From Macrostomum lignano (taxonomy: Eukaryota): a stretch of DNA of 64,000 nucleotides. The stretch spans positions 44,502-108,501 of the forward strand of contig NIVC01002203.1 in assembly GCA_002269645.1 (NCBI GenBank). The letters run 5' to 3'. The translations under genes and the position numbers were made by a program. Shown piece after piece: positions 14,397 to 64,000 of this stretch. The notes under the pieces were generated by a model. The model did no database searches. It saw only the letters and a program-made list of their open reading frames with translations, and was not told where the DNA came from. Position 1 is the stretch's first letter, and each line of letters starts with the position of its first letter.

Positions 14397-15980
14397 ATAA
14401 CTGAGTACTGTATATATTTCACTTGTTATATTTCTGTATGTATTACTATATATCAGGCTAGGCCTACTTAATTTTTTTGTTCAAATATTGCTCAGTTTTA
14501 CTGTAAATAAATTCACTATAGTATCACTAATTGCATTTGTTAACTGTATTGTATCTATATGAAGTATACTTTATACTTGCAAATAAAATGGTCTGTCTTA
14601 ATGGTAAGCCACCAAACTGCTAAAGTGTTAAAATTTATAATTACTGGAAATATTAACAAAATGAAAAATATAAATTTTAGTGCAAAAAATATGACAAAAG
14701 TCAAATAGAGCAAAGTTGAGGTCTGAAATTTACTAACTACCAAATTTTAATTCTATTTGACTGCTTAACAAAATTCAACTTGAATACTCAGCTTGAACTA
14801 CCAAAGTTTGGTCAAGTATTTGACTTGACCAAAACCTGAGTTTGTCTAGGCTAAATGCTTTAATAGTACTAGCTTATACTAAACTACAAGTTAGGCTAGT
14901 ATAGTAGTACTTAATAATATCATTTGACTAGGGATTTTGACTAAATTTTGATTTTGATCATTTTTTAGAGATGATATACAGTGTAGTACCAATGCATTGT
15001 TTCTATACTTAACCTATAATTTTTTTTCATAATCAAAACATTTTGAAACTAAATATTAAACAATGCTATCTAGGTTTTTATTGGTATTAAGATGCAAAGT
15101 TTTGGTATTAGAAAAAAAAGAACAAAATAGGATATTATATCATATCAAAGGTCAAACTTGAAGATATAATTAGAAAGTTGACATGCATGCTATACTTTAG
15201 CATCTGAAAAAATAGATAAAAATCTGAAATAAAACACTAATACAAAAGTTACACATTTTAAGCATCAAAGACCTAAAATGCTAAATAATAATGTGCTATG
15301 CTAATATACCAAATACATTGGTGACCCTTTGTAAGTGCACTATAATTTTCTACAGCAAAGGCCACCTTGACTATGGGGCTAGTATAATTTTAAATATTAT
15401 AATAAAGTTTAGAAGGCCTAATATGTATACTGTAAAAGATAGGTAAAGAGAATCTTTAGAGAATCTTAGAGATAATCAATATTTCTTTGATTATTAAATT
15501 GAAGCCAAAAAACTGTTTATATAGTTGCTATTAGTATTGCTCTCATCATTTGTCCTGAACTCCGTGAATTGAATATACTGACATTACATACGATACTACT
15601 ACTACTACTAGCTGACATGAGAGCACTATTGTATCCGTAATAGGTCTGTATCAAGTTAGTCATAGGCCTGTATCAACAATAAATAAATGAGGAACTCCCA
15701 TTTCTATAACTTCTACACTTCAGTCAGTGAAAAATTGATCTGTAGCCATTCTTTGTTGATCAATCAAAACTTGAATGCTGATGCCAGTGATGGTTCATGT
15801 TCATTCTTTGAATAAGAATTTGTTCATTTCGAAGAAACTTCAGCTTTTAATTTCGTGTTCAGTAAATCAATATTATCTAGTTATTATATGTATAAAGCGG
15901 AACTAAACTCTAATGTTATAGATTCTAGTGCAATAAAATTTTCTAGACTATTTTTATTATTAACTGAAATTTTATACACA

Positions 15981-16960
15981 GTGAGGTGGGGGTGGAGAAG
16001 AAAATAAAAAGGGGGCCCGCGGGTTTTGAAATTGGGAAAAATAAAATTTCGGTTTGTCGTCGGCACGTAAAGCCGGAAAATCGCACAAAATTGCTGCTCT
16101 GATTCTTCTCCTAGGTTACTCCGTCTGCCGGGTCCTCAATTCCGGGGGGAGGGTAGTCGCAATCGCAGTCGAGCGGTCTAGTAGCGGCCCGAGTCGTTCA
16201 GAATGGGTCCTCAGACACCGTAAACTCGTAATTCGTCGAGATTGCTAGTTGTGTTACTCTATGTAGTAAAGTAGCGCTGCCACCACCGTAAATGTCGTTT
16301 TACGGAACGTTGAGGGTCTCAGAGCTTTCTTTGAGTTGAGACTGACTGGTTATTTTACGCCCCGCGGGCAAATGACTCAATAGAAAAACTAAAGGCTTCG
16401 ATTCTGAACAACTGTATGGATAATATTAATATTGGCGAGCTTATTAATTATGATTTCGTTATTATTGTTATCGTTACTTATTGTTACTACTACGCGAGAT
16501 AATTGACCAACAACCAACAGAGAGAGAGAGCGGGCGAGCGAGCAAAAATAATAATTAAAAGAAAACACTAACAATCGAACACACACAAAAGCAATCGCAG
16601 TAGTAGCAGAAGGAGGAGGAGGAGAAGGAGGAGGAGGAGGTAAAAGATAAGAGAAGTAAAACGCAACGGTTTTATACATAAAAATTACATAGATCCAATA
16701 GGGGGGGACACCGAAAGGAACACTGGGTGGAACACCGGGGGGAACACTGGCGGGAAAAAGGGCAAACCCGGAAGGAATACAGCAAAACAAAGCGGGACCA
16801 AGGGAAGGGGCAACTATTGGACCACAGGTAGGGGCAACGAAAGGAAAGCGCACAGTTCAACCGGGGGAGCAGGAGTGACGTCAAGAATATCCCACCGGGG
16901 GAGGCGCTTCGCGCGTCGCCAACCGTTGCAGGAGCCCCAGTGGTAGACCGGCCTACCACA
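15981..16960. mobile_element. Solo-LTR-like insertion, 980 bp, present only in the left arm
   Basis: Starts TGAGGTGGG and ends CCTACCACA (TG..CA, 7/9 inverted); 5-bp TSD CACAG (15976-15980, 16961-16965); single CACAG empty site in the right arm near 63537-63541. Confidence 0.8.
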
Positions 16961-17178
16961 CACAGTCTGCACGGTAAAACTGAAAATGGATACAACATGC
17001 TGAGCAACACTTATAACAATTTTAAACCTAAGAGCACCCGAGCTAACATGGAGAGCCAAAATCTCGTAGTATAGCTACGAGTGATAAAGCTGAAGTCAAA
17101 ATTTAAATCTGCAACGCTGCAAATGGATTTCACAGAATACGTGTATATATCACATGTACAATATGTAGCTGTGGCAGC

Positions 17179-17478
17179 TAGGCGCGTCGGTGGGGGGGGA
17201 CATGTCCCCCCCCCCCCCAGTAAAAGCTTTGGGGGTGTCCCCCGACCCCACTTTGTGACCCGTTGTGGTAATCAATTTCTTCAGGACGTCAAAATATATA
17301 GCGCCTTCTGCGCCAAAATGCGTGCCTGCGCGCGGCGCGAAAAGGAGTACCTGCGGCGCCAAAATGAGCGCTGACTACACGATTCTCAAAATAATGGAAA
17401 TTTAGGAATTTAGTCATGTACATGTTGAATTCTTGGCTTTGTCTCCCCACCATAAAATCCATGGCGACGCGGGCCCTG
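17179..17478. mobile_element. MITE-like element related to 17732-18486, in opposite orientation
   Basis: Its end (reverse complement) CAGGGCCCGCGTCGCCATGGATTTTATGG resembles TAGGGGCGTCGCCAAAGATTTTATGG at 17732; carries inverted copies of the same 21-bp unit. Confidence 0.4.
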
Positions 17479-17731
17479 GCATATGGGATGTGCAAGCATT
17501 GCAGATATACATGTACGTATATCGTACATGTTCAAGTGAATATAAAGCTGCCGCAATCAAACGGTTGCTACATTGCGATTTACCTTGCGGGCTACCTTAC
17601 TTCTTTTATTAATCAATACATGTATACATGTACGTGGAACCACCCTTCCCGGAAAAAAACTAGCCGATTTGCAAGCGCGATTCGCTGGCGGCTTTTCGAG
17701 AGGGCATGCACCTTTTATATGTAAGCCTCAT

Positions 17732-18486
17732 TAGGGGCGTCGCCAAAGATTTTATGGCTTGGACAAAAGCTAATAATTTAAGTAACTAAATTCCTACATT
17801 GTTTTAGGAATTAATGTTAGTACTCATTTAGGCGCCGAAGACACTCATTTAGGCGCCGAAGACACTCATTTTGGCGCTTCAGGTAATTTTTTTGGCGCCG
17901 TAGATTCGGCACGATCATCATTTAGCGCAGCAGGCATTCATTCTGGCGCCGCAGGCACTCATTTTGGCACCGCGGGCACTCATTTTGGCGCCGCAGGCAC
18001 TCCTTTTAGCGCCGCAGGCATTCCTTTCAGCACCGCAGGCACTCATTCTGGCGCCGCAGGCACTCATTTTGGCACCGCTGGCACTCATTCTGGCGCCGCA
18101 GGCACTCCTTTTTGCGCCGCAGGCATTCCTTTTGGCACCACAGGCATTCCTTTTAGCACCGCAGGCACTCATTTTGGCGCCGCAGGCACTCCTTTTAGCA
18201 CCGCAGGCACTCATTTTGGAGCCGTAGGCACTCCTTTTAGCACCGCAGGCACTCATTTTGGCGCCGCAGGCATTCCTTTTAGCACCACAGGCACTCATTT
18301 TGGCGCCGCAGGCACTCCTTTTAGCGCCGCAGGCATTCCTTTTAGCGCCGCAGGCATTCCTTTTGGCACCGCAGGCACTCATTTTGGTACAGCGGGCACT
18401 CATTTTGGTACAGCGGGCACTCATTTTGGTACAGCGGGCACTCATTTTGGAGCCGCAAGCATTCCTTTTACGGGACGACGTGCCCG
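17732..18486. mobile_element. MITE-like element with an internal 21-bp array (GGCGCCGCAGGCACTCATTTT)
   Basis: AGGGGCGTCGCC ... GACGACGTGCCC imperfect termini; array at 17822-18468. Confidence 0.45.
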
Positions 18487-18701
18487 CGAGCGAATGCCCA
18501 AGCCCCACTGACTAACTGCATGCATTGGCCGCGCGTTGTCGTGACAAAAGGCCTCTCTATTTTACAATTGTTCCTCACAAAGCCCCTACTTATACATGTA
18601 CGACGTACAACCGAGCCGTCATGCGAATGTTTGTTATCTAATATATCTGAAAATTGTGCAACTGTCATCTTCCCACTGGACTGCACCAGGGACTGTTCAT
18701 T

Positions 18702-18708
18702 TATATAA
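18702..18708 (+). promoter_or_regulatory. Cystatin TATA box
   Basis: TATATAA ~27 nt upstream of an initiator-like CAGTT; 5'UTR intron GTAAG(18771)..CAG(18835); AATAAA at 19418. Confidence 0.65.
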
Positions 18709-18839
18709 GAGGGACTCGCACTTGAAAAACAGTTTGTGACAAAGCCTGACTCTGAACTGAAACTTCTCAGGTAAGATCCCGGCGAATTTCCAGTTGCTCA
18801 TCAAAGTAGAACTTTTGTTACGACCATTGCAACAGAAAA

Positions 18840-19289
18840 ATGAAGTGCGTCATTATGCTATCCGTTGTCGCCTTCTGTCTGGCCGGCGTCGCCATTGGCT
18901 CCCTGATCGGCGGCAAGCGCCCGCTGACACAGGAGGACGTCAAATCGCCTGAGTTCCGCGGCGCCTTGGACATGGCCACGCTGGAGATGAACCGGCTGAG
19001 CAGCCACCCCAGATTCCACGCAGTGCTCAACTTCGTGCGCGGCACCAAACAGGTGGTTGCCGGCGTCCTCTACGAATTCAGCATTGTTTTGCGCGCCACC
19101 GAGTGCGAGAACCACGAGGCGCAGAACCTGGAGAACTTGGCCAAGTGCGCCCCAGTGAACTTGCTCGGCGCCTCCGAGTTCCACTGCGACTTCAAGGTTC
19201 TCTACCAGCCGTGGTCCGGCAACTCTGAGTACCGGGTTATGAGCGAGCCGTCCTGCGTGTCACCCCGGGAGGTGCCCTTCGCCGGCTAA
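18840..19289 (+). CDS. Secreted type-2 cystatin (copy A)
   Basis: Hydrophobic signal peptide, N-terminal G (LIGG), QVVAG (QxVxG) and PW motifs, Cys pairs; intronless CDS. Confidence 0.92.
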   Translation: MKCVIMLSVVAFCLAGVAIGSLIGGKRPLTQEDVKSPEFRGALDMATLEMNRLSSHPRFHAVLNFVRGTKQVVAGVLYEFSIVLRATECENHEAQNLENLAKCAPVNLLGASEFHCDFKVLYQPWSGNSEYRVMSEPSCVSPREVPFAG

Positions 19290-19601
19290 GAGCCCCGAGG
19301 ATTACTAGGACTATGGGTCGAATTTCAGTTTTAGTGCACTATAAGCGCGTCTGAGACCGCTTGGTTATCTGCGTACGTGTCTTTGTTGACTTCAGCCCCT
19401 TGGTTTATCAAACATAAAATAAATAGACAACTACAGTAACCGCTAGTTCACATCATTGTTTCATTTATTATTTTTTAAATGGTCAAACGAGCTATCCTTA
19501 CATCTCCAAACCAGTGTACAACAGTTATGACTTAAAAGAAGAAACACAAATCAGATTATTTCGCATCCAGATTTGCATACATGTAAATTAGAATTTTGTA
19601 T

Positions 19602-20294
19602 TGAATCTGAATCCGAATCTGAATCCGAATCTGAATCCGAATCTGAATCCGAATCTGAATCCGAATCTGAATCCGAATCTGAATCCGAATCTGAATCCGA
19701 ATCTGAATCCGAATCTGAATCCGAATCTGAATCCGAATCTGAATCCGAATCTGAATCCGAATCTGAATCCGAATCTGAATCTAAATCTGAATCTAAATCC
19801 GAATCCGAATCTGAATCCGAATCTGCAAATCAGAATCTGAATCCGAATCTAAATCTGAATCCGAATCTGAATCTGAATCCGAATCTAAATCCGAATCTGA
19901 ATCTGAATCCGTATCTGAATCAGAATCTGAATCCGAATCTGAATCCGAATCTGAATTTGAATCAGAATCTGAATCCGAATCTGAATTTGAATCCGAATCT
20001 GAATCCGAATATGAATCTGAATCCGAATCTGAATCCGAATCTGAATCCGAATCTGAATCCGAATCTGAATCCAAATCTAAATCCGAATCCGAATCTGAAT
20101 CCGAATCCGAATCCGAATCCGAATCCGAATCTGAATCCGAATCCGAATCCGAATCCGAATCCGAATCTGAATCCGAATCCGAATCTGATCCGAATCCGAA
20201 TCCGAATCCGAATCTGAATCCGAATCCAAATCTGAATCCGAATCCGAATCTGAATCCGAATCTGAATCCGAATCTGAATCCGAATCTGAATCTG
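19602..20294. repeat. 6/12-bp microsatellite (GAATCC/GAATCT)n
   Basis: Produces the spurious ES/SD/NP-repeat ORFs. Confidence 0.95.
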
Positions 20295-21900
20295 CATTTA
20301 TCGAAGGATTCTACTAATAAAGACACTACTTTTTCAACGCTCTTCTAGTAGTATATCAGAGTTTTTTTTGTTGTATTTAGCTTTTAGAATTCTAAATCTT
20401 GATCGAATTACAACTGTTAATTTACTCACTAGTAGCTTTGGATTAAAATATAACAAAGAATAGCGTCTCTCGCACACAAGCTAACTCAGGAAACCTGTTC
20501 GCAAATGAATAATGTCTACCCTTATTATTTTTCGGCTCGTAGCAGCACAGCTATAATAATGATCATCTTCTAACAGGTGAGGCAGGTGCGAAAAATATAA
20601 TTAGCATGTTGTCGCCTTGGCATGAATCGCCATGCAGGTTTTTTTGGTTCTGACCGGATGTGAAAAAAAGAAATTGTATGAAATTTAAGTGTAGGTCGAC
20701 ATTCTCATTCATATGCGCATGAGAGCTGGGATTTGTTAATCTCGCTTGTTCTCTCTCTCTCTCTCTCTCTAGGACTAATCCCCAACAGGTGCTTCCCTGC
20801 TCGCACAGAGCATTCAATATGCTCGCCTAAGACCAAGTTTCTTGCATGTCTATCGCTGCAGATCGTGCCCTGGCATACACCTAGTTATTAGTTGAGTTGA
20901 ATCACAGAGAATTAACACTGTATGGTCAAGGGATAAATTGAAAATTCTGGAATTGAGGAGTGAGAGAGAGTGGGTGAGCGTGTGAAAGTCCCTGAGCAGA
21001 ACAATATGGGAATTAGCAGCAGCAAATGTGAGGCAGATGTAATAAAAGGAAAGTAAAGGCAGGTGCTGAACAAATGCTTGTGAGGCAAAATTATCACTGG
21101 CTGTCAGGCAGGCAGTCGGCAGTACAAACAATACATATATATAGATTGACTCCATAATTCAGGCGTTTGGGAAGAGACAAAAAAGCGACGAATGGATAGT
21201 CGCGAAAAATCCTTTAGCAAACCTCGGGAGCGGGGAGCGGGGAGCGGCGGGGGATATTTGGCGTAAGCCCCACCTCGCCTCCTCGCGGAGCGAGCGCCTT
21301 CTTCTCCTCGCTCAGTAAGTCAACAGAGACAGTCAGTCAGAGTCTAATAAAAATGAGCTGACTGCTCCAATAACTTCCTCACTGGAGAGAGAGAAGCGGG
21401 CTCCAAGTGTGCCAAACACGCTTTCTCTCTCTCTCTCTCGTCTCCCATTCCCAACGCGCGGGACATCAGTTCTGCTTTTAGAAGCAGCAGAAGCGGAGGC
21501 GGCGGCGGCAGCAGCGGCTGGTTGTGTGCGTGACCCAGAAAGCAATTTCTGGCAAAGATTTTTCAATCCAGTCCGCATTGATCAGCGCAGCTACATGGAT
21601 TTGAGTTCTGCAATTTCGCTTCACCTGCAGAGGCTTGATATTGAAGAGCAGTTCGAGCAATTTAAATAATTATCCCCACCACCTCAGCTCCGGGAAAGAC
21701 AATTAAAGCCACAAGTGGACGAGACTGCAGACTTCTGCAGACTTGCGGCAGAGCATTGTAGGCTGCACGCCCCCGATGGTGACTGCATGGGTTCTCAAAC
21801 AGCTCGGCATCTACTCGATATTCAGACATAGGGCATAATTTTTTTATTCAATTGCTGGAAGGATTTCTGCTGCGCAATTTAATCATTAAGTTGAAGATTC

Positions 21901-22412
21901 AATGATCCAACGATCCAATGACCCAATTACCCAAATACCCAAATACCCAATGACCCAATGATCCAATGATCCAGTGCTTAATGACCCAATGACCCAATGA
22001 CCCAAAAACCCAAATACCCAATGACCCAATGACCCAATGACCCAATGACCTAAATACCCAATGAACTAGTGACCCAGTGACTTAATGACCCAATGATCCA
22101 ATGACCGAATGATCCACTGACCCAATTATCCAATGACCCAATCTGGCGAGTAAAGAAACCAAATAACCCAATTACTCAATGACCCAATCATCCAATGACC
22201 CAATGACCCAATGACCCAATGATCCAATGACCCAATGACCCAATGACCCAATGACCCAATGACTCAATGACCCAATGACCCAATGACCCAATGACCCAAT
22301 GATCCAATGATCCAATGAGCCAATGACCCAATGAACCAATGACCCAGTGACTCAATGAACCAATGACCCAGTGACCCAATGACCCAATGACCCAATGACC
22401 CAATGATCCAAT
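21901..22412. repeat. 9-bp minisatellite (CAATGACCC)n
   Basis: Direct tandem copies. Confidence 0.92.
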
Positions 22413-23055
22413 GAACCAACCTGGCGAGTAAAGAAACCAAATAAACCAGACAGCAGACATTGTATAATTATTAAAGTTTATTTCATCAGATATAGCTCGA
22501 TTTGGTGCACAACTGTTATAATTGTGGCTGTACAGACAGCACTGACAAGCTGTACAAATGCTAAATTAAAATTGATCAAATATTTTGTGCAGTTCATCAA
22601 TTTTTTGTGCCACATCAATTTGCTGTTCGCTGTTAAACACAGGGGGGGGGCATTTTTAATTTCAGTTTTGATGGTCGAGCTTTCGCACACACAATGCGCG
22701 AAGTTACTCGTACATGACAAATTTCGAACTGAAAAAAAGCAGGATAAAAACAATTAAATTTCAGCCATGAAACCGACAAAAGAGAAACAGAATTGACATA
22801 CATAGAGAAAGCAACAATTTTCTTTTGACCAAAATAAGCAACGGCAGCAGAAGAAAGGACAGAGAAACACGCGGCAAAAATATGACAGGTTATAGTTTGT
22901 ACGTGCTAGAGGCTTGGAGAAGTTGATAAGAGGAAAAGAGAGGGGGGGGGGCAACCTTCGGGCAACTCGATGTCAAAATTCGGAAATAACGAATGCGAGA
23001 CTCTGGAAAGGAAGAATGCCAGCCAGGCCAGTTGCTGCTGCTGCTGCAGAAGCTT

Positions 23056-23965
23056 CTAGAAGACGCAACTGCTGCCCAGCTTGCCGCTGTCAACGCCCGC
23101 CGTAGCCGCCGCCGCCGCCGCCGCGGCCGCCAGCGCAGCAGCCGTTGTCGGCTTGCCGTTCTCTTCGTCCTCTTCGTCCTCGGTCTCGTCATCGTCTGGA
23201 AGCTCCTCGGAGGTGACGGCGGCGGCGGCCGCGGCGCACATAGCCTGATGGTAGTCGCCTGGAGAGCAGCTGCCGATGCGCTGGAAGTACTCCATGTGCT
23301 GCTGGTAGGCGAGCTGCTGCCCACCGCTGCCATAGTAGTCCACAGCGCCATCGAGATGCTGCTGCCTGTGCATCGACTGCTGAAGCTGCTGCTGCTGCTG
23401 CTGCTGCTGGTGATGGTGCATCGGCACAGGAATCGCGTACTGCACCTGCTGGTGCTGATGATGATGCGGTGGCTGCTGCTGCTGCTGCACCTGCGGCTGC
23501 GGACTCGGCGCCGAGTACATGTGCATCGGCAGGCCTATCGCGGCTGCTGCCGCGGCTGCCGCGGCGGACGCGCAGTCGCCGTACGGATAGTTCAAGTAGA
23601 TGCCACCGGGGCTGTAGCTGTCGCCGCCGCCGGCGCTGCCACAGTACTGCCTGGCATCGTACGGCTGACCATCCAGATAGCCGATCTGTCTGGCGCTGCT
23701 GTAGCCGGCAGCTGAGCCGTACTGCGACTGGATCGAATAGCTCCGATAGCCGTCGTCTCCGAGCACAGTCAGCTCTTCCAGAGTCGGCTGCGTTGAGGCC
23801 GGGTCGAAATGATCGACGATATGGTGATGCTGATGATGCTGATGATGGAGCTGCTGGAGCTGCTGCTGTTGCTGATGCTGATGGTTGGAAGACAGCGGCT
23901 GCTGGTGCTGATGAAGTTGAGGTTGCTGCTTCGGCGGCGGCTGCAGCGGCCCCATAATGAAGTCG

Positions 23966-24010
<45 letters not shown>

Positions 24011-24333
24011 AGGCCAATGACGTCAGCCGATCGATCAAATGACTGCGAGCCGCGAGCTGCCGTCTTCGAAGAGCCGCCGCCGCCACTGCCGCCGCTGCTG
24101 CCGCTGCTGCCTCCAGAGCCGCCGCTCTTGCCAGTTGAAGTCGCCTGGCGCGGCTGCGTGTCCGGGAAGGCCATGCTGTACAGGATCTCCGGGTCGCACA
24201 CAAACTTGTAGACGTACCGCTCGCCTGCCACCTTCTGCATGATGCCCTTCTCGTAGTAATAGCGCAGCGACCGGCTCAGCTTGTCGTAGTTCATGGCTGG
24301 CCGGTTCTTCTGAATGCCCCACAGCCGGGCCAC
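23056..24333 (-). CDS. pea3: PEA3/ETV1/4/5-family ETS factor, last exon (copy A)
   Basis: [54 protein letters not shown], the PEA3-type ETS C-half; CAG|GTG acceptor, phase 0. Confidence 0.95.
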
Positions 24334-24608
24334 CTGATGATTGATTGGGGTTGGGGTTGGGGCTCCACTCATACTGCACGGTGAGAGACGTGTCTGATTC
24401 TGCGTGTGTGCCAAGCATGACTGTAAATAGCGTTTCTGGAATTGCAAACATTATTTAATAATAGACTAGAATTGGGAAGAGATCGGGATTAAAGATACTG
24501 ACGACTCGTCTGTCCCAGAGAAATTTTGAATATCTTCAGCCCAATCTCTATGCCAAGATGAACAAATTTCTAATGATTATCGAGTAGGAAGTTTCGCTTG
24601 CAAGAATA

Positions 24609-24890: not shown

Positions 24891-24909
24891 TAGATCTGAG
24901 AAGAAGCAA

Positions 24910-25004
24910 TAAAAATTCAGCGGGCCGAATATTGTGTGAAGTTTTAAAGGACCCGAGGGCTGGATAGAGAGGCTTCCCTTCGGGCCGGAGTGTGCCGACC
25001 CCTG
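24910..25004 (-). mobile_element. hAT/Charlie-like terminal fragment
   Basis: Minus strand CAGGGGTCGGCACACTCCGGCCCG resembles Charlie-type TIR ends; the other end was not found. Confidence 0.35.
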
Positions 25005-39600: not shown

Positions 39601-39604
39601 CCTG

Positions 39605-53744: not shown

Positions 53745-54470
53745 TTCTTAGAAATTTCATCTTTCCAGTTATTCTTATCTGTTTAAAATTCATACTTTCA
53801 GTATAGTTCATACTCTTGGAATTTCATATTTCCAGTGTAGTTTGAATTCTTAGAAATTTCATATTTCCAGTGTAGTTTGAATTCTTAGAAATTTCATATT
53901 TCCAGTGTAGTTTGAATTATTAGAAATTTCATATTTGCAGTGTAGTTTGAATTCTTAGAAATTTCATATTTCCAGTGTAGTTTGAATTCTTAGAAATTTC
54001 ATATTTCCAGTGTAGTTTGAATTCTTAGAAATTTCATATTTCCAGTGTAGTTTGAATTATTAGAAATTTCATATTTCCAGTGTAGTTTGAATTCTTAGAA
54101 ATTTCATATTTCCAGTGTAGTTTGAATTATTAGAAATTTCATATTTCCAGTGTAGTTTGAATTCTTAGAAATTTCATATTTCCAGTGTAGTTTGAATTCT
54201 TAGAAATTTAATATTTCCAGTGTAGTTTGAATTCTTAGAAATTTAATATTTCCAGTGTAGTTTGAATTCTTAGAAATTTCATATTTCCAGTGTAGTTTGA
54301 ATTCTTAGAAATTTCATATTTTCGGTATGAGTTCATATTCTTGGAAATTTCATGATCCACTATAGTTAACATTCTTGGAGATGTCATATTTGATATTTCA
54401 AACATGATTTAATAGTCTTGGAAATTTCATATTTTCGGTATGATTTCATACTCTTAGAAATGTAATATTC
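53745..54470. repeat. 35-bp minisatellite, shorter than its left mirror
   Basis: ~725 bp versus ~1085 bp. Confidence 0.92.
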
Positions 54471-55091
54471 CAAGTATGGTTCATATAGCAATTTCACTTT
54501 GTTAGAATTTCAACACCCCGATCGGAAACCGTGAATTGCTTGTTTAATAATAAAAGCTACCGCTTCCAACTAAATAGAAAACAAAATGCTGTTTGCTATC
54601 CGAGATTCGAGTCCCAGTCCCCCCTCAAATATCTGTTTAGTTTTGTGCAGAAATTTCAGCAGGCAAAACCGGATGACAGCGCGAAAGCAAACGCGTGCCG
54701 GGGGCCGGTCTTGAAGAAAATATTTGCAGCAATATCCAGTTCACCGCCGTGGCGTCCAGACTGGATATTAATAATCCCCAAACACCTGAGCTTCCTCCGA
54801 GCTATAGCTGGCGCATGGAGGGAAGGGGGAATGCAAACAGACCATAGCTATTGCTAGAATTTCTAGAAGACACTGGCCGGGACAGGTCACGTGTCTGTTC
54901 CGCGGAGGAAGAGCGCCGGCGCGCCACAGTAGTTTGCTAATAATCAAAATCAGCGCGCGACACCTGAGCATCAATAAGGCTGTAGTACAGGGGTCGGCAC
55001 ACTCCGGCCCGAAGGGAAGCCTCTCTATCCAGCCCTCGGGTCCTTTAAAACTTCACACAATATTCGGCCCGCTGAATTTTTATTGCTTCTT

Positions 55092-55456
55092 CTCAGATCT
55101 ACTCTCGCTTCACTTTTCTTTCTTCTCTCCCCTCATCTCTCTTCTCTCTTTTCTCTCTTCTCTCTCCTCTCTTTTCTCTCTCCTCTTATCTATTCTCTCC
55201 TCTCTTCTCGTTCCTCTCGTCTATCATTTCTCTCTCCTCTTCTCCCTTCTACGAGCGTATCTCTTCTCTCTCCTCTCTTCTTCTCTTTCTTCTCTTCTCT
55301 TTCTTCTCTTCTCTTTCTTCTCTCTCCTCTCTCCTCTCCTTCCTTCTTTTTCCTCTCTCCTCTCCTCTCTCTTCTCTCTCCTCTCTCCTCTCTCCTCTCT
55401 TATCTATCCTCTCTCATCTCATCTCTCCTCTCTTTTCCTCTCTTCTCCTCTCCTCT
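55092..55456. repeat. CT-rich low-complexity tract
   Basis: Mirror of 24609-24890, with extra sequence. Confidence 0.85.
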
Positions 55457-55730
55457 ATTCTTGCAAGCGAAACTTCCTACTCGATAATCATTAGAAATTT
55501 GTTCATCTTGGCATTGAGATTGGGCTGAAGATATTCAAAATTTCTCTGGGACAGACGAGTCGTCAGTATCTTTAATCCCGATCTCTTCCCAATTCTAGTC
55601 TATTATTAAATAATGTTTGCAATTCCAGAAACGCTATTTACAGTCATGCTTGGCACACACGCAGAATCAGACACGTCTCTCACCGTGCAGTATGAGTGGA
55701 GCCCCAACCCCAACCCCAATCAATCATCAG

Positions 55731-56053
55731 GTGGCCCGGCTGTGGGGCATCCAGAAGAACCGGCCAGCCATGAACTACGACAAGCTGAGCCGGTCGCTGC
55801 GCTATTACTACGAGAAGGGCATCATGCAGAAGGTGGCAGGCGAGCGGTACGTCTACAAGTTTGTGTGCGACCCGGAGATCCTGTACAGCATGGCCTTCCC
55901 GGACCCGCAGCCGCGCCAGGCGACTTCAACTGGCAAGAGCGGCGGCTCTGGAGGCAGCAGTGGCAGCAGCGGCGGCAGCGGCGGCGGCGGCTCTTCGAAG
56001 ACGGCAGCGCGCGGCTCGCAGTCATTTGATCGATCGGCTGACGTCATTGGCCT

Positions 56054-56093
<40 letters not shown>

Positions 56094-57020
56094 CAGCAGC
56101 AGCAGCAACACGACTTCATTATGGGACCGCTGCAGCCGCCGCCGAAGCAGCAACCTCAACTTCATCAGCACCAGCAGCCGCTGTCTTCCAACCATCAGCA
56201 TCAGCAACAGCAGCAGCTCCAGCAGCTCCATCATCAGCATCATCAGCATCACCATATCGTCGATCATTTCGACCCGGCCTCAACGCAGCCGACTCTGGAA
56301 GAGCTGACTGTGCTCGGAGACGACGGCTATCGGAGCTATTCGATCCAGTCGCAGTACGGCTCAGCTGCCGGCTACAGCAGCGCCAGACAGATCGGCTATC
56401 TGGATGGTCAGCCGTACGATGCCAGGCAGTACTGTGGCAGCGCCGGCGGCGGCGACAGCTACAGCCCCGGTGGCATCTACTTGAACTATCCGTACGGCGA
56501 CTGCGCGTCCGCCGCGGCAGCCGCGGCAGCAGCCGCGATAGGCCTGCCGATGCACATGTACTCGGCGCCGAGTCCGCAGCCGCAGGTGCAGCAGCAGCAG
56601 CAGCCACCGCATCATCATCAGCACCAGCAGGTGCAGTACGCGATTCCTGTGCCGATGCACCATCACCAGCAGCAGCAGCAGCAGCAGCAGCTTCAGCAGT
56701 CGATGCACAGGCAGCAGCATCTCGATGGCGCTGTGGACTACTATGGCAGCGGTGGGCAGCAGCTGGCCTACCAGCAGCACATGGAGTACTTCCAGCGCAT
56801 CGGCAGCTGCTCTCCAGGCGACTACCATCAGGCTATGTGCGCCGCGGCCGCCGCCGCCGTCACCTCCGAGGAGCTTCCAGACGATGACGAGACCGAGGAC
56901 GAAGAGGACGAAGAGAACGGCAAGCCGACAACGGCTGCTGCGCTGGCGGCCGCGGCGGCGGCGGCGGCGGCTACGGCGGGCGTTGACAGCGGCAAGCTGG
57001 GCAGCAGTTGCGTCTTCTAG
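55731..57020 (+). CDS. pea3: PEA3/ETV1/4/5-family ETS factor, last exon (copy B)
   Basis: Same ETS C-half; 4 aa longer in the first poly-Q; AATAAA at 57590. Confidence 0.95.
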
Positions 57021-57659
57021 AAGCTTCTGCAGCAGCAGCAGCAACTGGCCTGGCTGGCATTCTTCCTTTCCAGAGTCTCGCATTCGTTATTTCCGAATTT
57101 TGACATCGAGTTGCCCGAAGGTTGCCCCCCCCTCTCTTTTCCTCTTATCAACTTCTCCAAGCCTCTAGCACGTACAAACTATAACCTGTCATATTTTTGC
57201 CGCGTGTTTCTCTGTCCTTTCTTCTGCTGCCGTTGCTTATTTTGGTCAAAAGAAAATTGTTGCTTTCTCTATGTATGTCAATTCTGTTTCTCTTTTGTCG
57301 GTTTCATGGCTGAAATTTAATTGTTTTTATCCTGCTTTTTTCAGTACGAAATTTGTCATGTACGAGTAACTTCGCGCATTGTGTGTGCGAAAGCTCGACC
57401 ATCAAAACTGAAATTAAAAATGCCCCCCCCTGTGTTTAACAGCGAACAGCAAATTGATGTGGCACAAAAAATGGATGAACTGCACAAAATATTTGATCAA
57501 TTTTAATTTAGCATTTGTACAGCTTGTCAGTGCTGTCTGTACAGCCACAATTATAACAGTTGTGCACCAAATCGAGCTATATCTGATGAAATAAACTTTA
57601 ATAATTATACAATGTCCGCTGTCTGGTTTATTTGGTTTCTTTACTCGCCAGGTTGGTTC

Positions 57660-58450
57660 ATTGGATCATTGGGTCATTGGGTCATTGGGTCATTGGGTCA
57701 CTGGGTCATTGGTTCATTGAGTCACTGGGTCATTGGTTCATTGGGTATTTGGGTCATTGGGTCATTGGGTCATTGGGTCATTGGATCATTGGATCATTGG
57801 GTCATTGGGTCATTGGGTCATTGGGTCATTGAGTCATTGGGTCATTGGGTCATTGGGTCATTGGGTCATTGGGTTATTAGGTCATTGGGTCATTGGATCC
57901 TTGGATCATTGGGTCATTGGGTTATTAGGTCATTGGGTCATTGGATCCTTGGATCATTGGGTCATTGGGTCATTGGGTCATTGGGTCATTGGGTCATTGG
58001 GTCATTGGGTCATTGAGTCATTGGGTCATTGGGTCATTGGGTTATTAGGTCATTGGGTCATTGGATCCTTGGATCATTGGGTCATTGGGTTATTAGGTCA
58101 TTGGGTCATTGGATCCTTGGATCATTGGATCATTGGGTCATTGGGTCATTGGATGATTGGGTCATTGAGTAATTGGGTTATTTGGTTTCTTTACTCGCCA
58201 GATTGGGTCATTGGATAATTGGGTCAGTGGATCATTCGGTCATTGGATCATTGGGTCATTAAGTCACTGGGTCACTAGTTCATTGGGTATTTAGGTAATT
58301 GGGTCATTGGGTCATTGGGTCATTAAGCACTGGATCATTGGATCATTGGGTCATTGGGTATTTGGGTATTTGGGTCATTGGGTCATTGGTTCATCGAGTA
58401 ATTGGGTATTTGGGTTTTTGGGTAATTGGGTCATTGGGTCATTGGATCAT
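57660..58450. repeat. 9-bp minisatellite (GGGTCATTG)n, longer than its left mirror
   Basis: ~790 bp versus ~510 bp. Confidence 0.92.
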
Positions 58451-60052
58451 TGAATCTTCAACTTAATGATTAAATTGCGCAGCAGAAATCCTTTCAGCAA
58501 TTGAATAAAAAAATTATGCCCTATGTCTGAAAATCGAGTAGATGCCGAGCTGTTTGAGAACCCATGCAGTCACCATCGGGGGCGTGCAGCCTACAATGCT
58601 CTGCCGCCAGTCTGCAGAAGTCTGCAGTCTCGTCCACTTGTGTGGCTTTAATTGTCTTTCCCGGAGCTGAGGCGGTGGGGATAATTATTTAAATTGCTCG
58701 AACTGCTCTTCAATATCAAGCCTCTGCAGGTGAAGCGAAATTGCAGAACTCAAATCCATGTAGCTGCGCTGATCAATGCGGACTGGATTGAAAAATCTTT
58801 GCTAGAAATTGCTTTCTGGGTCACGCACACAACCAGCCGCTGCTGCCGCCGACGCCTCCGCTTCTGCTGCTTCTAAAAGCAGAACTGATGTCCCGCGCGT
58901 TGGGAATGGGAGACGAGAGAGAGAGAGAGAAAGCGTGTTTGGCACACTTGGAGCCCGCTTCTCTCTCCAGTGAGGAAGTTATTGGAGCAGTCAGCTCATC
59001 TTTATTAGACTCTGACTGACTGTCTCTGTTGACTTACTGAGCGAGGAGAAGAAGGCGCTCGCTCCGCGAGGAGGCGAGGTGGGGCTTACGCCAAATATCC
59101 CCCGCCGCTCCCCGCTCCCCGCTCCCGAGGTTTGCTAAAGGATTTTTCGCGACTATCCATTCGTCGCTTTTTTGTCTCTTCCCAAACGCCTGATTATAAG
59201 GTCAATCTATATATATGTACTGTTTGTACTGGCGACTGCCTGCCTGACAGCCAGTGATAATTTTGCCTCACAAGCATTTGTTCAGCACCTGCCTTTACTT
59301 TCCTTTTATTACATCTGCCTCACATTTGCTGCTGCTAATTCCCATATTGTTCTGCTCAGGGACTTTCACACGCTCACCCACTCTCTCTCACTCCTCAATT
59401 CCAGAATTTTCAATTTATCCCTTGACCATACAGTGTTAATTCTCTGTGATTCAACTCAACTAATAACTAGGTGTATGCCAGGGCACGATCGGCAGCGATA
59501 GACATGCAAGAAACTTGGTCTTAGGCGAGCATATTGAATGCTCTGTGCGAGCAGGGAAGCACCTGTTGGGGATTAGTCCTAGAGAGAGAGAGAGAGAACA
59601 AGCGAGATTAACAAATCCCAGCTCTCATGCGCATATGAATGAGAATATCGACCTACACTTAAATTTCATACAATTTCTTTTTTTCACATCCGGTCAGAGC
59701 CAAAAAACCTGCATGGCGATTCATGCCAAGGCGACAACATGCTAATTATATTTTTCGCACCTGCCTCACCTGTTAGAAGATGATCATTATTATAGCTGGG
59801 CTGCTACGAGCCGAAAAATAATAAGGGTAGGCATTATTAATTTGCGAACAGGTTTCCTGAGTTAGCTTGTGTGCGAGAGACGCTATTCTTTGTTATATTT
59901 TAATCCAAAGCTACTAGTGAGTAAATTCGCAGTTGTAATTCGATCAAGATTTAGAATTCTACGAGCTAAATACAACAAAAAACTTTGATATACTACTAGA
60001 AGAGCGTTGAAAAAGTAGTGTCTTTGTTATAGTGGAATCCTACTATATATGC

Positions 60053-61068
60053 AGATTCAAATTCAGATTCAGATTCAGATTCGAATTCAGATTTGGATTC
60101 GGATTCAGATTTGGATTCGGATTCGGATTCAGATTCGGATTCGGGTTTGGATTCAGATTCGGATTCAGATTCGGATTCGGGTTTGGATTCAGATTCGGAT
60201 TTCGATTCAGATTCGGATTTGGATTCAGATTCGGATTTGGATTCAGATTCGGATTTGGATTCAGATTCGGATTCAGATTCAGATTCGGATTTGGATTCAG
60301 ATTCGAGTTTGGATTCAGATTCGGATTCAGATTCAGATTCGGATTTGGATTTAGATTCGGATTTGGATTCAGATTCGGATTTGGATTCAGATTCGGGTTT
60401 GGATTCAGATTCGGATTCAGATTCAGATTCGGATTTGGATTCAGATTCGGATTTGGATTCAGATTCGGATTTGGATTCAGATTCGGGTTTGGATTCAGAT
60501 TCGGATTCAGATTCGGATTCAGATTCGGATTCAGATTCGGATTCAGATTCGGATTCAGATTCGGATTCGGATTCAGATTCGGATTCAGATTCGGATTCAG
60601 ATTCGGATTCAGATTCGGATTCAGATTCGGATTCAGATTCGGATTCAGATTCGGATTCAGATTCGGATTCAGATTCGGATTCGGATTCGGATTCAGATTC
60701 GGATTCAGATTCGGATTCAGATTCGGATTCAGATTCGGATTCGGATTCGGATTCGGATTCAGATTCAGATTCGGATTCAGATTTGGATTCAGATTCGGAT
60801 TCAGATTCGGATTCAGATTCGGATTCAGATTCGGATTCAGATTCGGATTCGGATTCGGATTCGGATTCAGATTCGGATTCAGATTCGGATTCAGATTCGG
60901 ATTTAGATTCGGATTCAGATTCGGATTCAGATTCGGATTCAGATTCTGATTCAAATTTAGATTCGGATTCAGATTCGGATTCAAATTCAGATTCGGATTC
61001 AGATTCGGATTCAGATTCGGATTCGGATTCAGATCGGATTCTGATTTCGGATTCAGATTCAGATTCAA
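60053..61068. repeat. 6/12-bp microsatellite (GATTCG/GATTCA)n, longer than its left mirror
   Basis: ~1015 bp versus ~690 bp. Confidence 0.95.
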
Positions 61069-61391
61069 TATAAAATTCTGATTTACATGTATGCAGATCT
61101 GGATGCGAAATCTGATTTGTGTTTCTTCTTTTAAGTCATAATTGTTGTACACTGGGTCGGAGATGTAAGGATAGCTCGCTTGACCATTTAAAAAATAATA
61201 AATGAAACAATGAATTGAACTAGCGGGTACTGCAGTTGTCTATTTATTTTATGTTTGGTAAACCAAGGGGCTGAAGTCAACAAAGATATGTACGCAGATA
61301 ACCAAGCGGTTTTTCTGCCTCAGACGCGCTTATAGTGCACTAAAACTGAAATTCGACCCACGACTCGTTGTCCTAGTAATCCTCGGGGCTC

Positions 61392-61841
61392 TTAGCCGGC
61401 GAAGGGCACCTCCCGGGGTGACACGCAGGACGGCTCGCTCATAACCCGGTACTCAGAGTTGCCGGACCACGGCTGGTAGAGAACCTTGAAGTCGCAGTGG
61501 AACTCTGAGGCGCCGAGCAAGTTCACTGGGGCGCACTTGGCCAAGTTCTCCAGGTTCTGCGCCTCGTGGTTCTCGCACTCGGTGGCGCGCAAAACGATGC
61601 TGAATTCGTAGAGGACGCCGGCAACCACCTGTTTGGTGCCGCGCACGAAGTTGAGCACTGCGTGGAATCTGGGGTGGCTGCTCAGCCGGTTCATCTCCAG
61701 AGTGGCCATGTCCAAGGCGCCGCGGAACTCAGACGATTTGACGTCTTCCTGTGTCAGCGGGCGCTTGCCGCCGATCAGGGAGCCAATGGCGACGCCGGCC
61801 AGACAGAAGGCGACAATGGATAGCATAATGACGCACTTCAT
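61392..61841 (-). CDS. Secreted type-2 cystatin (copy B)
   Basis: QVVAG and PW motifs; differs from copy A by V9I and P37S plus synonymous changes; TATATAA at 61973-61979. Confidence 0.92.
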   Translation of the reverse strand: MKCVIMLSIVAFCLAGVAIGSLIGGKRPLTQEDVKSSEFRGALDMATLEMNRLSSHPRFHAVLNFVRGTKQVVAGVLYEFSIVLRATECENHEAQNLENLAKCAPVNLLGASEFHCDFKVLYQPWSGNSEYRVMSEPSCVSPREVPFAG

Positions 61842-62189
61842 GTTTCTGTTGCAATGGTCGTAACAAAAGTTCAACTATGATGAGCAACTGGAAATTCGCC
61901 GGGATCTTACCTGAGAAGTTTCAGTTCAGAGTCAGGCTTTGTCACAAACTGTTTTTCAAGTGCCAGTCCCTCTTATATAAATGAACAGTCCCTGGTGCAG
62001 TCCAGTGGGAAGATGACAGTTGCACAATTTTCACATATATTAGATAACAAACATTCGCATGACGGCTCGGTTGTACATGCAGTATAAGTAGGGGCTTTGT
62101 TAGGAACAATTGTAAAATAGAGAGGCCTTTTGTCACGACAACGCGCGGCCAATGCATGCAGTTAGTCAGTGGGCTTGGGCATTCGCTCG

Positions 62190-62763
62190 CAGGCACGTCG
62201 TCCCGTAAAATGAGTGCCCGCGGTACCAAAATGAGTGCCCGCGGTGCCAAAATGAGTGCCCGCGGTACCAAAATGAGTGCCCGCGGTACCAAAATGAGTG
62301 CCGCGGTACCAAAATGAGTGCCCGCGGTACCAAAATGAGTGCCCGCGGTACCAAAATGAGTGCCCGCGGTACCAAAATGAGTGCCCGCGGTACCAAAATG
62401 AGTGCCCGCGGTACCAAAATGAGTGCCTGCGGTGCTAAAAGGAATGCCTGCGGTGCCAAAAGGAATGCCTGCGGCGCTAAAAGGAGTGCCTGCGGTGCCA
62501 AAATGAGTGCCTGCGGCGCTAAAAGGAATGCCTGCGGCGCTAAAATGAGTGCCCGCGGTGCCTATCTCGGCACTCAAAAATGATCGTGCCGAATCTACGG
62601 CGCCAAAAAATTACCTGAAGCACCAAAATGAGTGTCTTGCGGCCTAAATGAGTGTCTTCGGCGCCTAAATGAGTACTAACATTAATTCCTAAAATAATGT
62701 AGGAATTTAGTTATTTAAATTATTTGCTTTTGTCCCAGCCATAAAATCTAGGCGACGCCCCTA
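62190..62763. mobile_element. MITE-like element with a 21-bp array, mirror of 17732-18486
   Basis: GGCGACGCCCCTA terminus at 62751-62763; shorter array. Confidence 0.45.
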
Positions 62764-63032
62764 ATGAGACTTACATATAAAAGGTGCATGCCCTCTCGGA
62801 AAGCCGCCAGCGAATCGCACTTGCAAACCGGCGAGTTTTTTTGCGAGAGGGGTGGTTCCTACGTACATGTATACATGTATTGATTAATAAAAGAAGTAAG
62901 GTAGCCCGCAAGGTAAATCGCAACCGTTTGATTGTAAATAAGCAACCGTTTGATTGCGGCAGCTTATAAATTAATATTCACTTGAACATGTACGATATAC
63001 GTATATCTGCAATGCTTGCACATCCCATATGC

Positions 63033-63325
63033 CAGGGCCCGCGTCGCCATGGATTTTATGGTGGGGAGACAAAGCCAAGAATTCAACATGTACATGACTA
63101 AATTCCTAAATTTCCATTATTTTGAGAATCGTGTAGTCAGCGCTCATTTTGGCGCCGCAGGTACTCCTTTTCGCGCCGCGCGCAGGCACGCATTTTGGCG
63201 CAGAAGGCGCTATATATTTTGACGTCCTGAAGAAATTGATTACCACAACGGGTCACAAAGTGGGGTCGGGGGACACCCCCAAAGCTTTTACTGGGGGGAC
63301 ATGTCCCCCCCACCGACGCGCCTAG
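63033..63325. mobile_element. MITE-like element, mirror of 17179-17478
   Basis: CAGGGCCCGCGTCGCC ... CCGACGCGCCTAG termini. Confidence 0.4.
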
Positions 63326-64000
63326 CTGCCACAGCTACATATTGTACATGTGATATACACACGTATTCTGTGAAATCCATTTGCAGCGTTGCAGATTTAA
63401 ATTTTGACTTCAGCTTTATCACTCGTAGCTATACTACGAGATTTTGGCTCTCCATGTTAGCTCGGGTGCTCTTAGGTTTAAACTTGTTATAAGTGTTGCT
63501 CAGCATGTTGTATCCATTTTCAGTTTTACCGTGCAGACTGTGGAAAAAATTTCAGTTAATAATAAAAATAGTCTAGAAAATTTTATTGTTCTAGAATCTA
63601 TAACATTAGAGTTTAGTTCCGCTCTTTACATATAATAACTAGATAATATTGATTTACTGAACACAAAATTAAAAGCTAAAGTTTCTTCGAAATGAACAAA
63701 TTCTTATTCAAAGAATGAACATGAACCATCAGGCTCCATAATGAGCCATTCAAAAGTTTTGATTGATCAACAAAGAATGGCTACAGATCAATTTTTTCAC
63801 TGACTGAAGTGTAGAAGTTATAGAAATTGGAGTTCCTCATTTATTTATTGTTGATACAGGCCTATGATTAATGCTTGATACAGACCTATTAGTATCTGTA
63901 TCATATTTGATAAAAACAAATTTGATATTTGATCAGTAATAGTATTACTGATACAATAGTGCTCTCATGTCAGCTAGTAGTAGTAGAATCGTATGTAATG

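What the first reader, a model, noticed from the sequence alone, without database searches (positions are those of the whole stretch)
15582..64000. ~48 kb palindrome duplicating INTS1-3', PEA3-ETS and cystatin
Seen: arms of >=24.0 kb and >=23.6 kb are reverse complements around a 777-nt spacer. They differ by true substitutions: at least 6 in the 450-nt cystatin CDS (4 synonymous) and mostly synonymous changes in the ETS last exon. They also differ in repeat lengths and by one LTR insertion, so they are two diverged sequences, not one read folded back. Established: large inverted duplications arise by fold-back or breakage-fusion-bridge events, and collapsed or uncollapsed haplotypes are a common scaffolding artefact in heterozygous or polyploid genomes. 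Inference: either a real gene-bearing palindrome or two alleles/homeologs joined head-to-head.
Basis: partly seen in the sequence, partly recalled or inferred. Interest (0 to 1): 0.7.

Follow-up and report, generated by a model that had tools for sequence, protein, structure and literature searches.

The report
Mis-scaffolded duplicate gene copies, not palindrome
The 48-kb "palindrome" is almost certainly two diverged copies of one flatworm locus (Macrostomum lignano, a hidden polyploid) that the scaffolding program joined head-to-head across an unsequenced gap, so it is an assembly artefact rather than a chromosome structure.

Summary
The structure is not supported.

The window is the end of scaffold NIVC01002203.1 of Macrostomum lignano assembly Mlig_3_7 (Canu contigs joined by SSPACE).
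- The left arm stops at the last base before the 159-N gap.
- The right arm is one whole terminal contig, running from the gap to the scaffold end.
- Over the 12.6 kb I could fetch, the right arm matches scaffold NIVC01003012.1 with 0 substitutions. That scaffold continues linearly into a homologue of the window's left flank, so there is no outer palindrome boundary.
- A third version, on NIVC01000846.1, has the same linear gene order and is about as distant from each arm as the arms are from each other.

This matches the published picture: three homeologous subgenomes about 2% apart, over-represented paralogues, and 36% of the assembly in chimeric scaffolds. Both INTS1 copies lack about 85% of the gene and point into the gap.

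Verdict: homeologous contigs mis-joined (about 0.85). A real inverted junction is not excluded (about 0.08). Interest is low.

The parts
15529..39604 (+). Left 'arm' = 3' end of contig A (copy A of the locus). It ends at the last base before the gap. Homology to the other copy actually continues leftwards to at least 9015 when compared with scaffold NIVC01003012.1.
   Evidence: Self-BLAST chain; MAFFT arm alignment; A versus L002 collinearity at 9015-15982
39605..39763 (.). Assembly gap of 159 N, an estimated-size SSPACE scaffold join. It is the only physical link between the two arms.
   Evidence: only N run; assembly method in PMC5730564
39764..40381 (+). First 618 nt of contig B. Unique in the window, 65% GC. 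It holds the INTS1 penultimate coding exon (open frame 39887-40342, donor GT at 40343) plus 39 nt of intron. The left copy lacks it only because contig A ends.
   Evidence: collinear alignment to human INTS1 1856-2189 across the exon junction
40382..64000 (-). Right 'arm' = the rest of contig B, a whole terminal contig running to the scaffold end. Positions 51385-64000 match scaffold NIVC01003012.1 with 0 substitutions.
39017..39598 (+). 36-nt minisatellite (16.3 copies) in the INTS1 intron. Contig A ends 6 nt after it. The mirror copy is at 40388-40970.
40388..40970 (-). Mirror copy of the 36-nt minisatellite in contig B.
37894..38895 (-). INTS1 last coding exon, copy A: intact 333-codon ORF ending in a stop, with INTS1_R4 and a weak R3 domain match.
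41085..42100 (+). INTS1 last coding exon, copy B. It has the same sequence as copy A but is interrupted by five 1-2-nt indels.
28232..28600 (-). ETS gene exon holding the N-terminal half of the ETS domain, copy A. It is identical to copy B at 51778-52146 (+).
23056..24447 (-). ETS (PEA3/ETV1-4-5-like) last exon, copy A: C-terminal half of the ETS domain plus a long Q/A-rich tail.
55617..57020 (+). ETS last exon, copy B.
51778..52146 (+). ETS-domain N-half exon, copy B.
18840..19289 (+). Cystatin CDS, copy A (149 aa, single exon).
61392..61841 (-). Cystatin CDS, copy B. The same protein is encoded on NIVC01003012.1.
15983..16960 (+). 978-nt solo-LTR-like insertion present only in copy A (TG..CA ends, 5-nt CACAG duplication, empty site in B).

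Best explanation
The window is the last 64 kb of scaffold NIVC01002203.1 of the Macrostomum lignano DV1 assembly Mlig_3_7. The two 'arms' are two separately assembled Canu contigs. They represent two of the three homeologous copies (subgenomes S, L1, L2) of one ordinary linear locus: peroxiredoxin - small ORF - cystatin - PEA3-type ETS gene - INTS1.

Both contigs break within about 620 nt of the same homologous position, at or next to a 36-nt minisatellite in an INTS1 intron. The copies become almost identical towards that point. SSPACE then attached contig B to the end of contig A in inverted orientation across an estimated 159-N gap. Contig B is a 24.2-kb redundant copy of the sequence on scaffold NIVC01003012.1, probably overlapping that scaffold's end (inferred; its last about 5 kb could not be fetched).

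Shown:
- the contig and gap geometry;
- the identity of B with another scaffold;
- linear continuation of that scaffold;
- a third, equidistant copy;
- truncation of INTS1 on both sides.

Inferred:
- that the join is wrong;
- that A, B and E correspond to the published subgenomes.

The precise reason SSPACE made the link was not determined.
For: 1. Source and method. Cystatin look-ups place the window at record 44,502-108,501 of a 108,501-nt scaffold of GCA_002269645.1. That assembly is Canu PacBio contigs + Pilon + SSPACE mate-pair scaffolding, with 180 Mb of >=95%-identical duplicated blocks and 63.95% error-free bases by REAPR (PMC5730564).

2. Geometry. The last HSP ends at 39604, and the N run is 39605-39763. 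Contig B runs from 39764 to the scaffold end.

3. Redundancy. B (64000-51385) versus NIVC01003012.1 gives 12.6 kb with 0 mismatches. The only differences are 1-nt homopolymer indels and compensating register shifts in arrays. Over the same stretch, A versus B has 1.5-2.7% substitutions in unique sequence.

4. No outer boundary. NIVC01003012.1 continues past window 64000 into sequence 92-95% identical to window 9015-15522, including peroxiredoxin.

5. Third copy. NIVC01000846.1 (195.9 kb) has the same linear order. Private sites over 16961-25500 are E 55, B 54 and A 33. All three copies are nearly identical at 26660-27550. So the arms are not each other's closest relatives, and the low divergence of the inner part, where the third copy could be compared (26660-27550), is shared by it rather than arm-specific.

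6. Literature match (PMC10733133):
- 69.6% of Mlig_3_7 is in 3-copy blocks;
- SNP rate is 2.2% genome-wide and 1.1% in CDS;
- L-S divergence is 2.41% and L1-L2 is 1.91%;
- many 4-copy blocks have only 3-fold read coverage;
- 1,131 scaffolds (36% of the length) are chimeric between subgenomes.
Here A-B is 2.4% in the outer unique sequence and 6/450 = 1.3% in the cystatin CDS.

7. Gene logic. Each arm has only INTS1 residues equivalent to human ~1856/1914-2190 of 2190. Both copies point their missing 5' ~85% into a 159-nt gap. The left copy would need at least 618 nt just to mirror the right.
Against: SSPACE needs several concordant read pairs to make a join, and simple cross-mapping of properly oriented pairs between homeologous contigs predicts a tandem link, not a head-to-head one. 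I found no local inverted repeat >=40 nt in the last 8.6 kb of either contig that could flip read orientation. So I cannot say how the false link arose.

A short single-copy spacer of a few hundred nt is also what a fold-back inverted duplication would leave, so the 159-N estimate is numerically compatible with a real junction.

I could not see raw reads, the last ~5 kb of NIVC01003012.1, or any contig carrying the 5' part of INTS1.
Confidence: 0.85

Rival explanations
1. The junction is real. In the DV1 line, two homeologous (or diverged homologous MLI1) segments are joined head-to-head inside INTS1. This could arise by a U-type exchange or a fold-back-like event between non-identical copies. 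It would leave a ~0.8-kb single-copy spacer and arms that extend outward for tens of kb, with NIVC01003012.1 being the outward continuation of the right arm.
For: The scaffolder did link the two ends head-to-head with a small positive gap, and ordinary cross-mapped pairs should not give that orientation. No local inverted repeat explains it. The spacer size fits fold-back junctions. M. lignano has an unstable, rearranged karyotype with inversions between paralogous regions (PMC10733133).
Against: No sequence crosses the junction, and the arm ends exactly at a contig end. The arms are no closer to each other than to a third copy on another scaffold. Such an exchange at nearly the same homologous position would give a dicentric or acentric product and destroy two INTS1 copies. 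36% of this assembly is in chimeric scaffolds, so the prior for a mis-join is high.
Confidence: 0.08
2. It is a real but much larger palindrome. Two complete INTS1 genes lie head-to-head (divergent), and the gap is grossly under-estimated because it hides both 5' parts and the true centre.
For: Both INTS1 copies point into the gap. Gap lengths are only estimates.
Against: Two INTS1 5' parts (about 1,850 codons each, plus introns) would need tens of kb. SSPACE gap estimates are bounded by library insert sizes, and this one is 159 nt. The evidence from the third copy and from the B = NIVC01003012.1 identity argues for dispersed homeologs, not a local structure.
Confidence: 0.04
3. It is a sequencing or assembly fold-back chimera, for example a PacBio read with a missed SMRTbell adapter that made a contig turn back on itself.
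For: Palindromic contigs from missed adapters are a known PacBio artefact (own knowledge).
Against: The arms differ by at least 126 true substitutions outside arrays and by a 978-nt LTR-like insertion. One arm matches another scaffold exactly at the sites where the arms differ from each other. The centre is a scaffolding gap between two contigs, and it is asymmetric by 618 nt.
Confidence: 0.02

Closest known systems
Chimeric scaffolds and over-represented homeologs in polyploid draft assemblies, specifically Mlig_3_7 as analysed by Zadesenets et al. 2023 (PMC10733133)
   Same: There are three distinct versions of the locus at about 2% SNP divergence, plus one redundant fourth representation. 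The join lies at an N gap made by SSPACE. The arms differ mainly by indels and tandem arrays, as reported genome-wide.
   Different: The published chimerism estimate concerns S/L mixing along scaffolds in general. A head-to-head join of homeologs at the same homologous position is a particular case. I could not assign A, B and E to S, L1 or L2.
Fold-back inverted duplications and breakage-fusion-bridge palindromes with a short single-copy spacer
   Same: Two inverted arms around a sub-kb asymmetric spacer; a gene is truncated at the centre.
   Different: Fold-back arms derive from one molecule and are initially identical. Here the arms are as diverged as unlinked homeologs, one equals another scaffold, and no read-level junction exists.
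Large gene-bearing palindromes of primate and mouse sex chromosomes (e.g. human Y P1-P8)
   Same: Tens-of-kb inverted arms that carry genes.
   Different: Those arms are >99.9% identical through arm-to-arm gene conversion, and they have sequenced spacers and defined outer boundaries. Here divergence reaches 2-3% in the outer part, the low inner divergence, where it could be compared, is shared with a third unlinked copy, there is no outer boundary, and the centre is unsequenced.

Membership tests
Genuine genomic palindrome / inverted duplication | Two arms in inverted orientation with significant similarity | tested here: met
   Self-BLAST and the repeat finder. This holds only at the level of the scaffold.
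Genuine genomic palindrome / inverted duplication | Continuous sequence through the centre, joining both arms on one molecule | tested here: not met
   The left arm ends at 39604, the last base before 159 N. The right side starts a new contig. The join was made by SSPACE.
Genuine genomic palindrome / inverted duplication | Defined outer boundaries where arm homology stops | tested here: not met
   The right arm is cut by the scaffold end. The identical scaffold NIVC01003012.1 stays collinear with the left flank to at least window 9015.
Genuine genomic palindrome / inverted duplication | Arms are each other's closest relatives (recent origin or arm-to-arm gene conversion) | tested here: not met
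   Three-way comparison: private sites are E 55, B 54 and A 33. The third copy shares the near-identity at 26660-27550.
Genuine genomic palindrome / inverted duplication | Long reads, depth or a physical map support the junction | not testable with these tools
   No read data are accessible.
Scaffolding mis-join of homeologous/allelic contigs | The junction coincides with an assembly gap, and one partner is a whole contig at a scaffold end | tested here: met
Scaffolding mis-join of homeologous/allelic contigs | The appended contig duplicates sequence placed elsewhere in the same assembly | tested here: met
   0 substitutions in 12.6 kb versus NIVC01003012.1
Scaffolding mis-join of homeologous/allelic contigs | Divergence between the joined pieces matches the genome-wide divergence between subgenomes or haplotypes | tested here: met
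   Observed: 2.4% in outer unique sequence, 0.81% overall, 1.3% in the cystatin CDS. Published: 1.9-2.4% between subgenomes, 1.1% in CDS.
Scaffolding mis-join of homeologous/allelic contigs | The assembly is known to contain such errors | tested here: met
   Literature: 36% of the assembly length is in chimeric scaffolds, and 4-copy blocks have 3-fold coverage. REAPR gives 63.95% error-free bases.
Scaffolding mis-join of homeologous/allelic contigs | No reads span the join, and the true neighbour (INTS1 5' exons) is found for each contig | not testable with these tools
   No INTS1 gene model exists in the protein collections, so other scaffolds could not be reached.

The most novel reading that the evidence does not exclude
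The head-to-head junction is real. Two homeologous segments of the neopolyploid M. lignano genome would then be fused in inverted orientation inside INTS1. That would be a sequence-level breakpoint of the rearrangements that built or destabilise the large chromosome MLI1 in the DV1 line.
Probability: 0.08. Interest if true: 0.5.

Novelty: not a real feature. Interest (0 to 1): 0.1.

Why it matters
As a biological palindrome it would have been a rare sequence-resolved rearrangement breakpoint in a young polyploid animal genome. As it stands, it is mainly a caution. In Mlig_3_7, and in similar drafts of polyploid or heterozygous genomes, a large gene-bearing 'palindrome' centred on an N gap at a scaffold end should be read as a homeolog or haplotig mis-join until reads prove otherwise. 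It is also a clean local example of the published three-subgenome structure: three equidistant copies plus one redundant copy.

Tried and rejected
1. I tried to reach the INTS1 5' part on other scaffolds.
- A word-index homology search with the INTS1 last exon found nothing.
- An exhaustive HMMER search with the penultimate exon gave one weak, low-complexity hit.
- The ETS exon search returned only other species' ETV1/4/5.
INTS1 and ETS are not annotated in this assembly, so I could not walk beyond 10 kb from cystatin on NIVC01003012.1 or NIVC01000846.1.

2. An exact look-up of the 228-aa peroxiredoxin ORF found nothing on record, because the annotated model is a 276-aa spliced form.

3. I looked for a local inverted repeat near either contig end that could explain mis-oriented mate pairs. 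There is none >=40 nt, and the 618-nt spacer has no other copy in the window.

4. A missed-adapter fold-back chimera is rejected because the arms differ by true substitutions that match another scaffold.

5. Arm-to-arm gene conversion does not explain the identity gradient, because the unlinked third copy shows the same near-identity at 26660-27550.

6. Rfam and tRNA scans of the window found nothing.

7. The supplement of PMC10733133 is too small to hold per-scaffold subgenome classes, so I did not open it.

8. Pfam on ORFs between the ETS-domain exons and INTS1 gave nothing, so I did not establish whether the whole ETS gene lies inside each arm.
Full report
**What is in the sequence.**
The window has one N run, 39605-39763 (159 N). 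A minus-strand self-comparison gives a continuous chain of alignments from 15638<->63891 to 39604<->40382.

A global arm-to-arm alignment has 21,854 matches, 319 mismatches and 3,478 gap columns. Most gap columns are copy-number differences in the many minisatellites, plus one 978-nt insertion.

Outside the arrays there are 126 substitutions in 15,575 aligned positions (0.81%):
- 2.4% in the outer part (15.4-22 kb);
- 0.27% in the inner part;
- almost none between 26 and 33 kb.

- The cystatin CDS has 6 substitutions: 4 synonymous, plus V9I and P37S.
- The ETS last exon has 7 substitutions, giving 1 amino-acid change plus a QQQH indel.
- The insertion at 15983-16960 has TG..CA ends, a 5-nt CACAG duplication and an empty site in the other arm. 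That fits a solo LTR.

Gene identities hold.
- Pfam finds Cystatin, an Ets domain split over two exons, and INTS1_R4.
- The best ETS relatives are ETV1/4/5 and Ets96B.
- The last two INTS1 exons align collinearly to human INTS1 residues 1856-2189 of 2190.

**The gap test.**
The left arm's homology runs to 39604, the very last base before the N run. That is 6 nt past a 36-nt minisatellite (39017-39598).

The right-hand contig passes through its own copy of that array (40388-40970) and continues for 618 nt (39764-40381). This stretch is unique in the window and 65% GC. It holds the INTS1 penultimate coding exon, with an open frame at 39887-40342 and a donor GT at 40343.

So the two sides of the gap are neither continuous nor in a common frame. 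They are the same gene on opposite strands, each transcribed away from the gap. Each arm has only about the last 15% of INTS1. The missing ~1,850 codons of both copies would have to lie in a gap estimated at 159 nt. The left copy alone would need at least 618 nt just to mirror the right. No end of homology is observed at the centre, only the end of a contig.

**Where the window comes from.**
Exact look-ups of the two cystatin proteins place the window on NIVC01002203.1 (108,501 nt) of GCA_002269645.1. Window position w corresponds to record position w + 44,501, so window 64000 is the last base of the scaffold.

The accession belongs to Macrostomum lignano assembly Mlig_3_7. It was built from Canu contigs of PacBio reads, polished with Pilon and scaffolded with SSPACE v3 from Illumina and 454 paired libraries. 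The authors report 5,980 contigs in 5,270 scaffolds, 180 Mb of duplicated non-repetitive blocks at least 95% identical, and 63.95% error-free bases by REAPR.

The right arm is therefore one entire 24.2-kb contig hung on the scaffold end by a mate-pair join. The nominal outer limit of the palindrome (15582 / 64000) is the scaffold end.

**The right arm exists elsewhere, in linear context.**
The right-arm cystatin protein is also encoded on NIVC01003012.1 (73,650 nt). The 20-kb piece I could fetch (L002) matches window 64000-51385 over 12.6 kb with 0 substitutions. The only differences are 1-nt homopolymer length changes and compensating +35/-35 and +42/-42 register shifts inside arrays. The two arms differ by 1.5-2.7% over the same stretch.

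That scaffold does not stop where the window stops. It continues into sequence 92-95% identical to window 9015-15522, with one ~1.45-kb insertion, and it carries the same peroxiredoxin neighbour.

So the right-arm sequence sits in an ordinary linear locus that is collinear with the left arm plus its left flank. Contig B is a redundant representation of that locus. By length arithmetic it overlaps the end of NIVC01003012.1 by about 17.6 kb and overhangs it by about 6.6 kb towards INTS1. This last point is an inference, because the final 5 kb of that scaffold could not be fetched.

**A third copy.**
The cystatin cluster holds a further member on NIVC01000846.1 (195.9 kb), with the same order peroxiredoxin - 118-aa ORF - cystatin - ETS. 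I call this copy E.

In a four-way alignment over window 16961-28233, outside the arrays:
- pairwise substitutions are similar: A-B 0.3-2.7%, A-E 0.4-2.0%, B-E 0.1-4.2%;
- private sites are E 55, B 54 and A 33;
- at 26660-27550 all three are nearly identical (A-B 0/855, A-E 1/855).

Two things follow. The arms are not each other's closest relatives, which a local inverted duplication would predict. And the drop in divergence towards the centre, where E could be compared (26660-27550), is shared by an unlinked copy rather than produced by arm-to-arm gene conversion.

More distant partial paralogues also exist, on NIVC01000825.1 (cystatin plus 4.2 kb at 95%) and NIVC01001975.1 (CDS only, 91%).

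**Fit to what is published.**
Zadesenets et al. 2023 (PMC10733133) analysed this same assembly and report the following.
- 69.6% of the assembly is in 3-copy paralogous blocks, corresponding to three homeologous subgenomes. S lies on the small chromosomes. L1 and L2 are two diverged copies of the large chromosome MLI1.
- The SNP rate is 2.2% genome-wide and 1.1% in CDS (L-S 2.41%, L1-L2 1.91%). Most of the difference between paralogues is indels.
- Heterozygosity within a subgenome is negligible.
- Many 4-copy blocks have only 3-fold read coverage, which means excess representation.
- 93% of read pairs multi-map.

The locus here is a textbook case. It has three distinct versions (A, B = C, E) at about 2% in unique non-coding sequence and 1.3% in the cystatin CDS. 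They differ mostly by indels and arrays, and there is one redundant fourth representation. Assigning A, B and E to particular subgenomes was not possible. The A-E flank identity (97.8%) exceeds A-C (about 95%), which hints that A and E might be the L1/L2 pair, but that is only a hint.

**Interpretation.**
The best-supported reading is that SSPACE joined two homeologous contigs head-to-head at a point where both Canu contigs broke. That point is next to a minisatellite, where the copies converge to near-identity (confidence about 0.85).

What I cannot explain is why the scaffolder saw a head-to-head link. Properly oriented pairs cross-mapped between homeologs would suggest a tandem arrangement with an impossible negative gap. 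I found no local inverted repeat >=40 nt in the last 8.6 kb of either contig. A library-orientation or chimeric-pair problem is possible but untested.

For that reason a real inverted junction between two homeologous segments keeps a small probability (about 0.08). A much larger palindrome hidden in an under-estimated gap gets about 0.04. A single-molecule fold-back chimera is essentially excluded by the arm-specific substitutions (about 0.02).

**Quality note.**
Compared with the intact 333-codon left copy, the right copy of the INTS1 last exon carries five 1-2-nt indels in GC-rich runs. Small-indel density between the arms rises towards the gap: 5-9 per 2-kb bin at 34-39.6 kb, against about 1 at 26-32 kb. 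The B-versus-NIVC01003012.1 differences are also homopolymer indels. These look like residual long-read errors in poorly polished redundant sequence. Pseudogenisation of one homeolog cannot be excluded.

**Verdict.**
Nothing here is new biology beyond the already published subgenome structure, so interest is low.

Noticed in passing
window 15983-16960: A 978-nt insertion present only in copy A. It has TG..CA termini and a 5-nt CACAG target-site duplication, and the empty site is intact in copy B. That is a solo-LTR signature. No second copy was found in any fetched sequence.
   Followed up: partly
window 41085-42100 (versus 37894-38895): The right-arm copy of the INTS1 last exon is broken by five 1-2-nt indels in GC-rich runs, while the left copy is an intact 333-codon ORF. 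Small-indel density between the arms rises towards the gap. This is probably unpolished long-read error at a redundant contig end, but it could be a decaying homeolog.
   Followed up: partly
window 26000-35400 and L005 19384-21421: Divergence between homeologs falls from about 2.4% to almost 0 across the interior of the ETS gene. The unlinked third copy shares this at 26660-27550. Possible causes are strong constraint, recent homeologous exchange, or homogenisation by short-read polishing of multi-mapping sequence.
   Followed up: partly
whole window, e.g. 19603-20292 versus 60052-61066; 21900-22419 versus 57653-58452; 25526-26643 versus 53736-54353: Minisatellite density is very high (55 TRF rows; units of 8-36 nt). 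Array length differences account for most of the size difference between homeologs. For example, the 12-nt GAATCTGAATCC array is 690 nt in A and about 1,015 nt in B.
   Followed up: no
window 960-1260: A degenerate telomere-like tract (TTAGGG / TTTTAGGG variants) lies inside the scaffold. No perfect (TTAGGG)3 was found within 2 mismatches.
   Followed up: partly
window 2606-3229: (TCTG)n microsatellite of about 158 units, just beside the peroxiredoxin gene.
   Followed up: no
window 3493-4179 (-): A typical 2-Cys peroxiredoxin (AhpC-TSA + 1-cysPrx_C) encoded mostly in one exon. The annotated gene model is a 276-aa spliced form, and it is conserved next to cystatin in all three homeologs.
   Followed up: partly
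L002 6309-7762 (NIVC01003012.1): An insertion of about 1.45 kb in copy C relative to copy A, just outside the nominal arm boundary. Not characterised.
   Followed up: no
L006 9996-14192 (NIVC01000825.1); L004 9996-10488 (NIVC01001975.1): Older partial paralogues of the cystatin region. One shares the CDS plus 4.2 kb downstream at 95%. The other shares only the CDS at 91%. Both have different flanks, so they are dispersed segmental copies on top of the three homeologs.
   Followed up: partly
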